Source: Tetramitus jugosus
Taxonomy: Eukaryota > Protista > Heterolobosea
Direction of reading: 5' to 3'
NCBI GenBank assembly: GCA_937625935.1
Contig: OW569391.1
Location: forward strand, 317,949 to 381,948
Length of the DNA stretch: 64,000 bases
Within the stretch, counting starts at the first letter, position 1; the number at the start of each line of letters is the position of its first letter. The notes below the pieces were generated by a model that worked only from the letters and a program-made list of their open reading frames with translations, had not been told where the DNA came from and made no database searches. Shown in pieces: positions 59,241-64,000 of the stretch. A program made the translations under genes and the position numbers.

Positions 59241-59445
59241 CTATGGAGTGGATATTTCAAATGTTCTCAGCTCTGTTGAGAAAATATGGGAATCAAATCA
59301 AGAACGGGAAACTCGATCTCCATAGTGAGGCTGATGCAAGATTGCATGCACTGTAATTTTTTGGACGTGCTAGCGGTCAACGAATGGATACCTACTGTGC
59401 TGTGACGTTAGGTCATCTACAATTTTTTGTTGTCTCCTCCTTCAA

Positions 59446-59464
59446 TTGGGGTTGGGGTTGGGTT
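59446..59464 (+). repeat. Interstitial telomere-like tract (TTGGGG/TTGGG variants)
   Basis: TTGGGGTTGGGGTTGGGTT. Confidence 0.55.
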
Positions 59465-59683
59465 GTCACATATCGGCTAGCCAAGACTGGCTGAATACAG
59501 TCAACTGGACGTTGTAAAGGTTGTTTTTGTATTCTTTATGGTCTGGAGTGTTCAACTTAAGCTTTGTATGGAAAAACTCACTATAGATTCTGAACTATCC
59601 CCAAACTGTGATATGGAGTTGGGTTTTGAACTCAGAAAACCCAAATCTCTATGACCTATTGACTGTTGAGTCGATAAAAAATA

Positions 59684-59945
59684 GGCGGAACCAGCCGTTT
59701 CGGCCTAGAAAAGCTTTTTTACAGAGGAACTATCTGGTTCCGCCTAAAAATTGGACTCACAAGCGGAACTATCTGGTTCCGCCTAAACTTTCGACGTTAC
59801 AGAGGAACCAGCTGGTTCCACCTAAAACTTGACTTTGTCAGTGGAACTATCTGGTTCCGCCTGTAATATGGCTTTTTCAGTGGAACCAGCTGGTTCCGCC
59901 TAAATGCACACATGTCTAAGAGGAACCAGATAGTTCCGCATAAAA
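59684..59945. repeat. Array of 7 palindromic repeats, 39-bp period, variable spacers
   Basis: GGAAC starts at 59687, 59726, 59765, 59804, 59843, 59882 and 59922; consensus GGAACYAKCTGGTTCCGCCTAAA. Confidence 0.9.
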
Positions 59946-60441
59946 AGATTTCTACAGAGAAACTTGGAACTAGATCAGAAAGGTTCTAACATCTGAAGGA
60001 AGATACATTGTGACAGAGACGGTTGAACTGCAAGATTGAAGTCCTTCATAAATTGTTTGTAATGCTTAGTCGGTGAATACAATAGAATGATGAATGCATT
60101 CTCGACTGGGAATGACATTGTCCAGTAACCGAAACGTGGGGAAAGGAAAAGACCAAGGACACGGCAGGAAATATTTTGTAACAAAGAATGATGAAGGAAC
60201 TTAAACTCCTTTGATGAAGGTTAAACATGGATGAAGGATTGTTGTTAGGATTACAATGAGAGTTTTGACATCGAGGGCAGAGATGCATGGAGCGAATGAT
60301 TGAGTGAGAGGGAGTTGTAACACGTGTTAGGAAGAAATATCAAGGAAGTGAGAACAAGATTACAATGATGGGCATTGTATTCCTGCATAAAAATTGATTT
60401 TGAGATGATTTTGAGATTTTGATGAGAAAATGACCTTTGAC

Positions 60442-60460
60442 TTGGGTTTGGGTTTGGGTT
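60442..60460 (+). repeat. Interstitial telomeric repeats at the retroelement 3' junction
   Basis: TTGGGTTTGGGTTTGGGTT. Confidence 0.85.
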
Positions 60461-62230
60461 CAAACACTCCACTATGGGGCGCGAGAGTGGCGAGTGAGAT
60501 GTTGTTGTTGTTTGTTAGTTGTGGTATATTTACGTGCAACACAGGTATTCGGGCTGGACGCAAATCTAGTGCGGTGCCTAAACATGAGCACTCTACACCA
60601 CAACTTTATTATTTATACTAAAAGTGCAGGTCAACTTGGCTGCACAAAAGTCTTGAACCTTGGAAGATTGCAATTGCCCATTGGGCCGATAAAAATGGTC
60701 CGTAGGACCATTTTAATTGGCCGTTGGCGATTTGCACTGTAGTCGGAGCCGTACCCCGTACGGTTTATCCTGACTACGAATCTTGTGGTTCAGTACCACT
60801 TGTAGTCCATGCTATCAAGTTTGCGTTTCTTGATGCGAGGTGCACTCTGCATTAACGTACAACCCTTTGTATCTCTCATTCTCTTAGATACAACGGTTGT
60901 ATTCACGTTGCAAGAGTCCCATGTGGACTGTGAAGGAGTTGTTTTGTGTCGTTTGGCCATTGCCGCTTCGACAGCCTCCTTTTCCCTCAAGTACCTCTTA
61001 TTTTGGGTCTTGGGTGGGTTTGGGCGCAGGTGCGTTGCTGACTTCGTCAGCATCACGCACCCGCGTGATGTTTTGCGAAGTCGCAATTGCAACTGGCGTC
61101 TAATTGTTGAATAACCACTTCCCCTTTCCGAAAATGATCGGATCAGTCGTTGTGCAGCAAATGAAGTACGCTGCCAACGTCGTTTGTGGTTACCAACAAC
61201 AACGTCCATCAATGTTCTTGCCATTTTCTTCTTTTCTTCTTCGTTTGGCATTTGATCACATTGTTGCACCCAAGTGTTGAATTTGGTTTTGCATGCGTGC
61301 AGAACTTCCCTAATGTTGGGAAGTCTGACATTGCAAATGACCAATTCCTTTGGCAAGTCAATCTCATTGAAGAGAGAAATGGCATTTATCAATTGTCGAT
61401 AATTGATGCCACTGCCAGAGTGTAACACTTTCCAAATTGGTGGAATTTTTGGTTTGTGTTGCAAGTCCAATTTTTGTTGGTACTTGATCACTCTGGCTTG
61501 CCAGTCAATTGATTTGCAGTATCGTTCAACGAGTGCAAAGTAATTGTTCTTTTTGAACATTCGTTGAACGAAATGGTGGTCATAACCTCTTCGGATTAAC
61601 CGAGAGGCAAACAATGTTCGAATTGAATCGAATTGTTTGAAGTGATCAACAAGGCGAGCGTATCTTACCAACTCACCTGTGATCAGACCTTTCCTTGCTG
61701 CAAATGAAGACGCTGACTTGTACATGGAGTACATGTACTTGTTCAATGGCTTCTGGTAGACATTGAAGTGAAAGCGCCATAATGGAACTGCAAAGTTCTC
61801 ATAATACTTTTCCAATTGGATGTGCAAATCCAGGAAAACATTATTGTCTGCTTTGCAGAGTTTCAAATCCGAACCATTGTACATGTTGACAATGGTAGGT
61901 ATGCACTCTTTTGTGCAAGCAATGAACAAATCGTCAATGTACCTCACTGCAATGCAGTGGGATCTGTTGACTTTGGTCAAGTGTTGCAACTCATAAGCAA
62001 GTAGCACAAGGTTGGCTAATTCAGGCGCACAATTTGTGCCCATTGGAAGGCCAATTACTTGTTTAAAAATGCTATTGTTGAGTTCCTCACATCTAATGTA
62101 TGTGCAGGTTAACACAAAATGCAACAACAATTTCATTGCACCAATTTCTTGACTTGTCCAAGTGTTTGGTTCAAGTTGTTGCATCATTTCAAAGATGTAC
62201 TCCATATTTGTTTTGATGACGTCATGTCTC
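60461..62230 (-). mobile_element. 5'-truncated Penelope-like retroelement (RT ORF 60790 to about 62230, structured 3'UTR)
   Basis: KQVIGLPMGTNCAPELANL, RYIDD, FLDL, VYQKP, GELVRY, LIRRGY. RT motif A is missing because the ORF runs into telomeric repeats. No GIY-YIG in the retained C-terminal part. Confidence 0.9.
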
Positions 62231-62252
62231 TGGGTTGGGTTTGGGTTTGGGG
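62231..62252 (+). repeat. Interstitial telomeric repeats capping the truncated 5' end of the retroelement
   Basis: TGGGTTGGGTTTGGGTTTGGGG. Confidence 0.85.
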
Positions 62253-63241
62253 TACGCAGTATTTAAATAACCTGCTTTTTTAGACGTTTCCTTTTTAGGC
62301 AGGTTGTTTTTTGAGATTTTTTTATTGCTCTAAAAGCTTCAACTGATTGAGTTGAAGAGTTTGGCGTGATTTTCAACTCAATTTGAGCTTTATCAGCTCA
62401 TAAAGGAGACATATATGCTGTATGTAACAGATTTTTAACGGCAACAGTGTTAAAACGGCAACAGATTCCAGTCGATTTTGATCCTGTACTGGAGTTAAGA
62501 CATTCGAGTGAAACATGGTTTCTTTGTTTTGGATCAGGGGATTGAGACAGTATTGGGACATTATTTGATCATTTTTAACATGATTATCTTCCAACTATAT
62601 TTTTTGCCTCAGTTTCTGAGTACCTGATTTTTCAGAAATTTTGACAGACTTGATTTAGTGTTTTTCTGGATAGAATCGACAGTTTTTATCAAATAATCAC
62701 TGTAGAATCATATATTTTATCTATTATTGAGACTTTTCGTTTTAAAATTCTGTAAAACAGTGAAATAGTGAAGTTTCCAATTTGAATCAAGTTTATAGTT
62801 GAAATGTCTGACTCAACCCGTCAAAAATTCAGAGTACTAGCGTTTGTGAATGACTAATCAGTTTTATGAATGTAATAGACTGAAAATCTTGGAAATAATT
62901 CTTCTTCTGAGAGATATTAACTCTGATAGAATGAGATTTCCAATTTTGTTTTGTTGAGTGCAGAGTTGAATACCCAACCCGTCATAACTGAAGAGAAATA
63001 GAAATGATTACTCATAAAACGTATATTGACTCCCTAGCTTGCCTCAAATTCTTCCAGATGCTAAGCATTTAATGAGAAGATTTCTGTTTTCAACAAAAAC
63101 TAAGGAGTGAATGTCAAAGGATAGAGAGAAATGGACTGAGCAATTTTATCTTCCATTCATGTTGTTTGAACAGATTTTAGATGATAGATCGATTCTGTTT
63201 TGAATTTGGATGAAATATTTGATTTTTGGGAAAGAAGTCGA

Positions 63242-64000
63242 TTTGGGTTTGGGTTTGGGTTTGGGTTTGGGTTTGGGTTTGGGTTTGGGTTTGGGTTTGG
63301 GTTTGGGTTTGGGTTTGGGTTTGGGTTTGGGTTTGGGTTTGGGTTTGGGTTTGGGTTTGGGTTTGGGTTTGGGTTTGGGTTTGGGTTTGGGTTTGGGTTT
63401 GGGTTTGGGTTTGGGTTTGGGTTTGGGTTTGGGTTTGGGTTTGGGTTTGGGTTTGGGTTTGGGTTTGGGTTTGGGTTTGGGTTTGGGTTTGGGTTTGGGT
63501 TTGGGTTTGGGTTTGGGTTTGGGTTTGGGTTTGGGTTTGGGTTTGGGTTTGGGTTTGGGTTTGGGTTTGGGTTTGGGTTTGGGTTTGGGTTTGGGTTTGG
63601 GTTTGGGTTTGGGTTTGGGTTTGGGTTTGGGTTTGGGTTTGGGTTTGGGTTTGGGTTTGGGTTTGGGTTTGGGTTTGGGTTTGGGTTTGGGTTTGGGTTT
63701 GGGTTTGGGTTTGGGTTTGGGTTTGGGTTTGGGTTTGGGTTTGGGTTTGGGTTTGGGTTTGGGTTTGGGTTTGGGTTTGGGTTTGGGTTTGGGTTTGGGT
63801 TTGGGTTTGGGTTTGGGTTTGGGTTTGGGTTTGGGTTTGGGTTTGGGTTTGGGTTTGGGTTTGGGTTTGGGTTTGGGTTTGGGTTTGGGTTTGGGTTTGG
63901 GTTTGGGTTTGGGTTTGGGTTTGGGTTTGGGTTTGGGTTTGGGTTTGGGTTTGGGGTTGGGTTTGGGTTTGGGTTGGGTTTGGTTTGGGTTTGGGTTTGG
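63242..64000 (+). repeat. Terminal telomere (TTTGGG)n
   Basis: About 760 bp of near-perfect hexamer running to the window end, G-rich strand 5'->3' outward. Confidence 0.98.

What the first reader, a model, noticed from the sequence alone, without database searches (positions are those of the whole stretch)
60442..62252. Penelope-like retroelement bracketed by telomeric repeats at both ends
The RT is transcribed toward the centromere. Its 3' end abuts (TTTGGG)3 at 60442-60460, and its ORF is cut just after motif A (…RHDVIK…) and continues directly into telomeric repeats at 62231-62252. Established: this polarity and 5' capping match telomere-associated PLEs (Athena, Coprina), which prime reverse transcription on the G-rich chromosome end and are then healed by telomerase. 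The GxPMGTNCAPxLANL signature looks Naiad/Chlamys-like to me. Those clades carry an N-terminal GIY-YIG, so loss of the endonuclease cannot be decided from this truncated copy. Inference: a retroelement-assisted chromosome-end extension system in this protist lineage.
Basis: partly seen in the sequence, partly recalled or inferred. Interest (0 to 1): 0.85.

Follow-up and report, generated by a model that had tools for sequence, protein, structure and literature searches.

The report
Dead telomere-attached Penelope-like retroelement copy
This is a front-truncated, dead copy of a retroelement with no DNA-cutting enzyme that copies itself directly onto worn chromosome ends of a Naegleria-related amoeba; this lifestyle is already known from rotifers, fungi and plants, and this appears to be the first case in this amoeba group.

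Summary
Window 60461-62230 (minus strand) is the last 1770 bases of a reverse-transcriptase element. Its 3' end abuts a 20-base TTTGGG-type tract (60441-60460) and its cut 5' end abuts a 22-base tract (62231-62252). It lies 1.8 kb inside the real telomere (63242-64000, the contig end).

The genome holds four copies that are 99.5-100% identical. They share one 3' end, have different flanks, and have four different 5' ends (1770, 2200, 2472 and about 5040 bases). All lie at contig ends in the same polarity. The 5.0-kb copy on contig C10 has a helical, basic-tailed ORF1 and a 1273-codon ORF2 in the -1 frame. No GIY-YIG endonuclease was detected in it.

All nine 3' ends found join telomeric DNA in the same register (GGGTT|CAAAC). 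Relatives in two other assemblies are also capped by CCCAAA repeats.

It is therefore an endonuclease-less, telomere-attached Penelope-like element of the Athena/Coprina kind. It differs in having no detectable hammerhead ribozyme. Its RT groups beside the PLEs with an N-terminal endonuclease, but not significantly (UFBoot 94, AU p 0.07).

A TERT gene is present, so the element rides on chromosome ends rather than maintaining them. The scan has already reported this family at other ends of this genome.

The parts
60441..60460 (+). Proximal telomeric tract (CTTGGGTTTGGGTTTGGGTT). It is the G-strand end on which the element was primed, or equivalently the reverse-complement telomeric tail of its RNA.
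   Evidence: The same junction GGGTT|CAAACAC occurs in all 9 copies with a 3' end. Tract lengths of 7-25 nt were read at seven of them.
60461..60789 (-). 3' untranslated region of the element, strongly structured and partly conserved.
   Evidence: MFE -111.9 kcal/mol against -85.2 for shuffles, z -5.5. Two hairpins keep pairing through double changes in copies and relatives. No Rfam family matched, and no hammerhead was found.
60790..62230 (-). 5'-truncated ORF2: the RT from just after motif A, through motifs B-E and the thumb, to the conserved C-terminus ...SMDYKWY. The copy is dead.
   Evidence: It differs at 7 of 1770 bases from the full-length copy on C10 and at 4 from the C17 copy.
61000..61024 (+). 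Internal telomere-like tract inside ORF2 (TTTTGGGTCTTGGGTGGGTTTGGG on the + strand), preceded in the RNA by a hairpin. It is a recurrent point where other copies end and telomere repeats begin.
   Evidence: The C10 and C3 fragments (query 1207-1770) and an older C9 fragment end there; the telomere join was read directly at C10 and is indicated by coordinates at C3. The hairpin was seen.
62231..62252 (+). Distal telomeric cap on the truncated 5' end.
   Evidence: Longer copies continue here with element sequence (AAATTGGTGTAC...), also in metagenome contigs (loose ends at 62230).
62253..63241 (+). 989-base subtelomeric module added outside the element. It is context, not part of the retroelement.
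   Evidence: At least 44 copies at contig ends, always next to the terminal repeats and in one polarity. An identical copy at C33 follows unique DNA.
63242..64000 (+). Terminal (TTTGGG)n telomere, ending at the contig end.
   Evidence: window = C48:317949-381948; the contig ends at 381948.
59446..60440 (+). Older telomere-like tract (59446-59462) plus a different subtelomeric module onto which the element was added. This is context.
   Evidence: related modules on C43 left and C7 right ends.

Best explanation
Window 60461-62230 is a dead, 5'-truncated copy of a young family of endonuclease-less Penelope-like retroelements that live at the chromosome ends of a heterolobosean (Naegleria-related) amoeba.

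Shown: the master-type copy (C10:604662-609701, about 5.04 kb) has a 48-nt leader and a 309-aa ORF1 with a long-helix N-terminal half and a disordered Arg/Ser/Lys-rich tail. It also has a 1273-codon ORF2 in the -1 frame, which opens just before an A7 run. ORF2 carries the PLE N-terminal motifs, RT motifs and thumb, but no endonuclease. A 330-nt structured 3' UTR follows.

Inferred mechanism: the RNA ends in, or pairs through, a short AACCC(AAACCC)n tail. This tail anneals to the G-rich 3' end of a badly shortened or broken chromosome end. The element's RT extends that 3' OH using the RNA as template, so no DNA cleavage is needed. This places the element with its 3' end towards the centromere. 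Synthesis stops early, or the new end erodes, and telomerase then adds TTTGGG repeats. Here the stop was one codon after motif A. At other ends it was often at an internal telomere-like tract. Later a 989-base subtelomeric module and a new telomere were added outside the element. The result is a chain of modules separated by short telomeric tracts.
For: - Identity as a PLE: the RT carries GLKF, DKN and FYLLPKVHK...GRPIVAS motifs. Homologues include C-terminal GIY-YIG PLEs (P0035, PF01541 precomputed) and many proteins with HTH_animal/DUF8422. There were 4177 hits in the representative library.
- Four copies at 0-10 differences share one 3' end, have different flanks and have 5' ends at 1770, 2200, 2472 and about 5040 bases. 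All lie at contig ends in the expected polarity.
- 9 of 9 3' ends join telomeric DNA in the same register. If the register were random, eight further junctions matching the first would have chance (1/6)^8.
- Head-to-tail pairs occur on C10 and C3, separated by 10 and 41 nt of telomeric repeat.
- No GIY-YIG: Pfam on the held parts of ORF2 and on ORF1. The six-frame PF01541 search of the whole genome gave 4 hits, none on C10. The N-terminus of an N-terminal-endonuclease PLE found nothing.
- ORF1 is helical over residues 4-184 and has a disordered tail.
- The 3' UTR folds far better than shuffles and shows covariation.
- Relatives behave the same way. Contigs of P0001 and P0002 (GCA_037189345.1) carry CCCAAA-type caps on truncated 5' ends. 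The contig of P0042 ends ...TTGCAAACCCAA and has ORF1 plus ORF2.
- A TERT gene is present.
- Exact matches occur in groundwater and soil metagenomes, and contigs there continue through the truncation point.
Against: - No retrotransposition event was observed. Priming on the G-overhang and capping by telomerase are inferred from junction anatomy.
Absence of a nuclease there rests on the six-frame family search alone.
- Distal truncation could be erosion after insertion rather than incomplete reverse transcription.
- The proximal tracts are all very short (7-25 nt), although normal telomeres here are several hundred bases long. Attachment to normal telomeres is therefore either rare or followed by loss of repeats.
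- Two old copies (C50 at about 169 kb, and C7 about 57 kb from its end) are internal, though both keep the AACCCAAACC junction.
- RNA evidence is only a hint: four short contigs in a soil library that the tool flags as probably DNA.
Confidence: 0.85

Rival explanations
1. The copies were spread among chromosome ends by subtelomeric recombination or break-induced replication, not by reverse transcription. The element would be a fossil that is only shuffled.
For: Subtelomeric modules here are clearly copied between ends: the 989-base module is 100% identical at C48 right and C33 left. C10 and C3 carry the same order (long copy, then 564-base fragment), and their long copies are identical over 2472 bases.
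Against: Each of the four young copies has a different proximal flank and a different 5' end but the same 3' end. That is the signature of end-primed reverse transcription, not of copying a block. The C3 long copy stops at 2472 bases where C10 continues, so neither end is a simple copy of the other. The full-length copy has both frames open.
Confidence: 0.07
2. It is a host-recruited end-maintenance system, a functional partner of or back-up for telomerase as in Drosophila HeT-A/TART, rather than a selfish element.
For: It adds DNA only to chromosome ends. Attachment sites are critically short telomeric tracts of 7-25 nt, i.e. ends that needed rescue. The family is conserved in at least two other assemblies.
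Against: TERT is present. Every contig end examined has several hundred bases of canonical repeats. Only about 10 of 112 ends hold any PLE sequence, and most copies are dead fragments. No evidence of host control was found.
Confidence: 0.1
3. It is a telomere-specific non-LTR (LINE-type) retrotransposon, like GilT, SART/TRAS or Zepp, and not a Penelope-like element.
For: It has two ORFs, 5' truncation and a telomeric position. Only a weak RVT_1 match was found.
Against: The motifs upstream of the RT (GxKF, DK-, LPKVHK..RPIV) and all significant homologues are of PLE type, including GIY-YIG-bearing ones. There is no APE or restriction-like endonuclease and no poly(A) or target-site duplication. 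The 3' end is a telomere-complement tract.
Confidence: 0.02

Closest known systems
Athena (bdelloid rotifers, including giant Terminons) and Coprina (fungi): endonuclease-deficient, telomere-attached Penelope-like elements (Gladyshev and Arkhipova 2007, as summarised in PMC8557442 and PMC6431247)
   Same: No endonuclease; 4-6 kb with two ORFs; ORF1 coiled-coil-like and separated by a frameshift; 3' end carrying a short reverse-complement telomeric stretch; copies 5'-truncated and capped by short telomeric tracts; head-to-tail chains at chromosome ends.
   Different: No hammerhead ribozyme next to the 3' repeats (Rfam at E<=1 and a core-motif scan). The host is a heterolobosean with TTTGGG telomeres. 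In my tree the RT lies outside the well-supported clade that holds the C-terminal-endonuclease PLEs and most small endonuclease-less RTs. No named Athena or Coprina sequences were available, so clade membership is untested.
Naiad/Chlamys: PLEs with an N-terminal GIY-YIG endonuclease, and their endonuclease-less offshoots (PLE-X of Selaginella and Chara) (PMC8557442)
   Same: Near-identical motif B; no canonical hammerhead; DK- instead of DKG; the RT tree favours a position beside this clade (94/90).
   Different: No GIY-YIG. No CxC motif upstream of GxKF. Only 7-8 extra residues between motifs A and B rather than about 20-40. Telomere-attached rather than inserted in microsatellites or rDNA. 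The AU test does not exclude a position with canonical PLEs (p 0.068).
Drosophila HeT-A / TART / TAHRE telomeric retrotransposons
   Same: End-on addition with the 3' end towards the centromere, head-to-tail arrays, variable 5' truncation.
   Different: These are a different RT class (LINE/jockey) with poly(A) tails. They replace telomerase in Drosophila, whereas here telomerase and canonical repeats are present.
Telomerase reverse transcriptase (TERT)
   Same: PLE RTs are the sister group of TERT (PMC8557442), and both extend a G-rich chromosomal 3' end from an RNA template.
   Different: The host's own TERT is a separate gene (C31). The element copies its whole mRNA, not a short internal template.

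Membership tests
Penelope-like elements (RT) | RT with PLE-specific upstream motifs (GxKF/Y, DKG-type) and LPKxHK...RPI(V/I)S, homologous to RTs fused to a GIY-YIG endonuclease | tested here: met
   GLKF, DKN and FYLLPKVHK..GRPIVAS are present in the C10 ORF2. Homologues P0035/36/37/41 show a C-terminal GIY-YIG motif (Pfam PF01541 precomputed for P0035 only). P0025 carries an N-terminal GIY-YIG at Pfam's cut-off. Close homologues carry HTH_animal/DUF8422.
Endonuclease-deficient telomere-attached PLEs (Athena/Coprina kind) | No endonuclease domain in a full-length copy | tested here: met
   No nuclease family on the held parts of ORF2 or on ORF1. The six-frame PF01541 search of the genome has no hit on C10. 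The N-terminus of an N-terminal-endonuclease PLE finds nothing. Caveat: 92 codons were not read directly.
Endonuclease-deficient telomere-attached PLEs (Athena/Coprina kind) | At chromosome ends, 3' end inward, joined to G-strand repeats through a short reverse-complement telomeric stretch | tested here: met
   9 of 9 3' ends read GTGTTTG|AACCC.... The young copies are all within 10 kb of contig ends in the right polarity.
Endonuclease-deficient telomere-attached PLEs (Athena/Coprina kind) | 5' truncations capped by telomeric repeats; head-to-tail chains | tested here: met
   Caps at 1770, 2200, 2472 and 564 bases; tandem pairs on C10 and C3. Caps are also present in relatives' contigs L061 and L062.
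Endonuclease-deficient telomere-attached PLEs (Athena/Coprina kind) | Hammerhead ribozyme fold immediately upstream of the 3' telomeric stretch | tested here: not met
   No Rfam match at E<=1 on either strand of the full-length copy. No CUGANGA...GAAA core in the 3' UTR. A different, covarying fold is present. Minimal variants outside Rfam cannot be fully excluded.
Endonuclease-deficient telomere-attached PLEs (Athena/Coprina kind) | RT falls inside the Athena or the Coprina clade | not testable with these tools
   No named reference sequences could be obtained: clusters are unnamed. Language-model neighbours are mostly rotifer clusters, which is only a lead.
Naiad/Chlamys (N-terminal endonuclease PLEs) | N-terminal GIY-YIG endonuclease | tested here: not met
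Naiad/Chlamys (N-terminal endonuclease PLEs) | CxC motif just upstream of GxKF/Y | tested here: not met
   P0025 and P0031 have NCRC / QCLC before GHKF / GCKY. The element has no CxC in the 220 residues before GLKF.
Naiad/Chlamys (N-terminal endonuclease PLEs) | Insertion (IFD) of about 20-40 residues between RT motifs A and B | tested here: inconclusive
   A-to-B spacing is 73 residues here, 65-68 in C-terminal-endonuclease PLEs, a median of 65 in 131 others, and 71-104 in the N-terminal-endonuclease group.
Naiad/Chlamys (N-terminal endonuclease PLEs) | RT groups with the clade | tested here: inconclusive
   It is sister to a group holding the N-terminal-endonuclease clade at UFBoot 94 / SH-aLRT 90. 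The alternative with canonical PLEs costs 8.8 lnL, p-AU 0.068. The tree is unrooted and has no TERT.
Non-LTR telomeric retrotransposons | LINE-type RT with APE or restriction-like endonuclease, or a gag-like ORF1 with zinc knuckles; poly(A) or simple 3' tail | tested here: not met
   No such Pfam domains were found. The 3' end is a telomere complement, not poly(A).

The most novel reading that the evidence does not exclude
The heterolobosean family (this element plus P0001, P0002 and P0042) would be a third, hammerhead-less clade of telomere-attached, endonuclease-less PLEs. It would be the closest endonuclease-less relative of the N-terminal-endonuclease Naiad/Chlamys lineage and the first from Discoba. 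That would support the idea that attachment to chromosome ends is the ancestral PLE lifestyle, from which both endonuclease-bearing PLEs and telomerase arose. With a 0-difference pair of copies and an intact master in a telomere-to-telomere assembly, it would also be a tractable live system.
Probability: 0.35. Interest if true: 0.65.

Novelty: new member of a known kind. Interest (0 to 1): 0.45.

Why it matters
Endonuclease-less PLEs are the nearest relatives of telomerase and the best living model for how an RT could have taken over chromosome-end synthesis. Known cases come from rotifers, fungi, plants and some protists. I found no report from Naegleria-type amoebae in the paper library.

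This genome offers complete chromosome ends with an apparently intact master copy. It also has daughters with 0-10 differences, a fixed 3' junction register, and a recurrent internal stop-and-cap site. The priming and capping steps could therefore be tested directly in a culturable free-living amoeba.

The copy in this window is itself an ordinary dead fragment. Its value is as one dated layer in a chain of modules that records successive repairs of one chromosome end.

Tried and rejected
As a result C10:607932-608204 (92 codons of ORF2) and the lengths of C9, C30 and C50 were not read. I did not try to get them another way.
- Pfam found nothing for ORF1 or the ORF2 N-terminus.
- Rfam found nothing.
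- A first GIY-YIG regular expression was too strict. A second one worked only for C-terminal types.
- Cluster look-ups gave no organism names, so no named Athena, Coprina, Naiad or Chlamys anchors and no TERT outgroup could be put in the tree.
- MAFFT --auto on full-length proteins timed out. I trimmed the sequences to the RT and realigned.
- A stimulatory structure after the A7 slippery run is not supported (z -0.03). The -1 frameshift is therefore inferred from frame geometry only.
- ORF1 has no similarity to the ORF upstream of P0042. It has weak similarity to the one upstream of P0082 (E 2e-5, partly low complexity).
- Contigs of P0021 and P0082 show no telomeric repeats.
- Low-depth joints in the source run's contigs (for example 61578 to 60442, and 62406 to 60442) could be further end-on additions. 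They rest on 21-26-base sides, so I do not count them.
- The paper PMC1890498 is not held.

Full report
**What is in the window.** The window is the right end of contig C48 (C48:317949-381948) of a 26.35-Mb, 56-contig assembly. It ends in 759 bases of (TTTGGG)n at 63242-64000. Apart from that array, TTTGGG-type repeats occur only at 60441-60460 and 62231-62252, both on the + strand. That gives 126 matches to two repeat units against 0.46 expected. A looser tract lies at 59446-59462. Between the two short tracts the minus strand holds a 479-codon open frame (60790-62229) with a weak RVT_1 match over motifs B-C, followed by 329 bases of untranslated sequence. One addition is needed: the distal tract is not the chromosome end, because a 989-base module (62253-63241) lies between it and the telomere.

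**Copies in the same genome.** A DNA search finds four near-identical copies that share the whole 1770 bases. They are C48 right end (-), C17 left end (+), C10 right end (-) and C3 left end (+). Each is therefore in the same polarity relative to its telomere. The protein search shows their open frames differ in length: 490, 631, 776 and 1273 codons.
- Reading the junctions shows the 3' end is always ...GTGTTTG on the sense strand.
- The proximal flanks differ. The proximal telomeric tracts are 19, 10, 19 and 7 nt.
- The 5' ends lie 1770, 2200, 2472 and about 5040 bases from the 3' end. The three truncated copies are each followed by telomeric repeats of 22, 24 and 41 nt.
- C10 and C3 are identical over 2472 bases. 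C48 differs from C10 at 7 of 1770 positions and from C17 at 4.
- C10 and C3 each carry a second, 564-base copy outside the long one. It is separated by 10 and 41 nt of repeat, and it ends at an internal telomere-like tract of ORF2 (window 61000-61024). At C10 the telomere repeats were read starting there; at C3 the coordinates indicate the same. An older C9 fragment ends at that tract too.
- A pattern search for the junction finds nine 3' ends. All read GGGTT|CAAACAC on the G strand.
- That set includes three older copies of about 77-92% identity (C9 left, C50, C7). Each keeps an AACCCAAACC(C) stub.
- Older fragments lie at C9 left and right, C22 right, C30 right, C8 left and C35 left in the expected polarity. 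C9 right and C30 are embedded in sequence shared with other subtelomeres.
- Exceptions are C50 at about 169 kb, a 160-base piece on C7 57 kb from its end, and two tiny or weak matches in the opposite orientation (C6, C12).

**The full-length element.** C10:604662-609701 (held except for 273 bases) has the following parts.
- A 48-nt leader.
- ORF1 of 309 aa.
- ORF2 of 1273 codons with no stops. It opens in the -1 frame six codons before an A7 run and overlaps ORF1 by 90 nt. The folding energy downstream of the run is no better than shuffles.
- The 3' UTR.

ORF1 is predicted as long helices over residues 4-184, followed by a disordered Arg/Ser/Lys-rich tail (single-sequence model, mean pLDDT 61). 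ORF2 has the PLE hallmarks upstream of the RT (…FNLT…LNKGLKFIPS, …DTDKNLG…, FYLLPKVHK…GRPIVAS) and then motifs A-E and the thumb.

No endonuclease was found. Pfam shows none on the held pieces. A six-frame PF01541 search of the whole genome gives four hits, none on C10. The N-terminal 290 residues of an N-terminal-endonuclease PLE match nothing.

The 3' UTR folds at -111.9 kcal/mol against -85.2 for shuffles (z -5.5). Two hairpins keep pairing through double substitutions across diverged copies and relatives. No Rfam family matched, including hammerheads, and no hammerhead core lies in the UTR.

**Relatives.** The closest proteins are P0001 (59%) and P0002 (44%), both from assembly GCA_037189345.1, and P0042 (35%) from a Logan run.
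- The contigs of P0001 and P0002 show truncated 5' ends capped by CCCAAA-type repeats.
- The contig of P0042 ends ...TTGCAAACCCAA and carries an upstream ORF.
- Telomere attachment is therefore a family trait, not an accident of this genome.
- Among the best 150 of 4177 representatives, most are proteins of about 600 aa with no room for an endonuclease.
- P0025 and P0031 and their kin have an N-terminal GIY-YIG (Pfam 22.9 bits against a cut-off of 22.6) and a CxC motif before GxKF. They share motif B almost exactly with the element.

**Phylogeny.** I built a careful ML tree (44 RTs, 496 columns, LG+C20+F+G4 PMSF).
- It unites the element with P0001, P0002 and P0042 (100/99).
- That clade sits beside a group holding the N-terminal-endonuclease clade (94/90).
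- It lies apart from a 100/96 clade that contains the C-terminal-endonuclease PLEs and most small RTs (same topology).
- Forcing the clade into the canonical group costs 8.8 lnL, p-AU 0.068. The position is therefore favoured but not established.
- The tree is unrooted and has no named Athena, Coprina or TERT rows.
- A-to-B spacing is intermediate (73 against 65-68 and 71-104 residues).
- ESM Atlas neighbours are mostly rotifer clusters. This is a lead only.

**Host and context.**
- The window's TFIIH p52 has Naegleria gruberi and N. fowleri as its best named hits (38% identity, E 1e-100, against 1e-81 for fungi). This fits the heterolobosean assignment in earlier notes but indicates a distant relative.
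- A TERT gene is present: Telomerase_RBD at 137.6 bits in a 1074-codon frame on C31.
- The stretch occurs at exact identity in groundwater and soil metagenomes.
- A soil library labelled metatranscriptomic holds only pieces of the PLE ORF and none of the far more numerous modules. This hints at RNA, but the tool flags the run as probably DNA.
- The 989-base module sits under the terminal repeats of at least 44 ends. At C33 an identical copy follows unique DNA.
- The block inside the PLE (59446-60440) is another such module.
- This chromosome end is therefore a stack: module, short tract, PLE, short tract, module, telomere.

**Mechanism.** The anatomy described above is shown. The following steps are inferred.
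- The RNA's telomere-complement tail pairs with a G-rich 3' end that has been worn down to a few repeats.
- The RT extends that end.
- Synthesis aborts or the end erodes.
- Telomerase caps the new end.

This matches the model for Athena/Coprina and Terminons (PMC8557442; PMC6431247). Those papers describe two-ORF, 4-6 kb endonuclease-less PLEs, 5' truncation by short telomeric stretches, head-to-tail arrays, and 3' reverse-complement repeats placed next to a hammerhead. The hammerhead is the one feature tested here and not found.

**Verdict.** The copy in the window is an ordinary dead fragment of a real, young, probably still active family. The kind is known. The host group, the hammerhead-less 3' end and the likely separate position of the RT are new. 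Earlier reports of this scan describe the same family at other ends of this genome, so this finding adds a further instance rather than a discovery.

Noticed in passing
window 62253-63241; also at least 44 contig ends of the genome: A 989-base non-coding module lies directly under the terminal telomere at most chromosome ends, always in one polarity, and is bounded inside by a short telomeric tract. The C48 copy is 100% identical to the one at the C33 left end. Inner, distally truncated copies occur about 2 kb from several ends. Contigs of related PLEs from another assembly show a similar module end just outside their CCCAAA caps (L061, L062).
   Followed up: partly
window 59446-60440: A second kind of subtelomeric module starts after a degenerate telomeric tract and contains an array of GGAACC-N-GGTTCC palindromes (59684-59945). 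Related modules lie on the C43 left and C7 right ends.
   Followed up: partly
window 60620-60650 (minus strand), conserved in copies and in L061/L062: A covarying hairpin with the loop AGTTGAC is followed by an invariant T-rich TATAAATAA(A/T)AAA motif in the PLE 3' UTR. It could be a promoter that drives the next element in a chain, as in HeT-A. This is untested.
   Followed up: no
G000:C47:381807-381908: A GIY-YIG match (23.2 bits, just over Pfam's cut-off) lies in a 119-codon frame about 5 kb from the right end of C47. It is not inside any PLE copy found.
   Followed up: no
G000:C31:284128-284511: The host telomerase gene: Telomerase_RBD at 137.6 bits within a 1074-codon open frame.
   Followed up: no
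L007/L011, C50:168101-168514: Next to the old internal PLE copy on C50 is a 138-codon frame whose CxxC...H...C pattern looks like the C-terminal zinc knuckle of a LINE ORF2. This may mark a transposon-rich internal region or a former chromosome end.
   Followed up: no
L067 (GCA_024228275.1, binned as Arcobacter): A contig filed under a bacterial MAG carries a PLE RT followed by the GIY-YIG start of the next tandem copy. It is a eukaryotic N-terminal-endonuclease PLE mis-binned as bacterial.
   Followed up: partly
Read laying on window 59400-63300, run X1: Low-depth contigs join PLE position 61578, or module position 62406, directly to a new telomeric tract plus a PLE 3' end. They may be further end-on additions elsewhere or in subpopulations, but they rest on sides of only 21-26 bases.
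   Followed up: no
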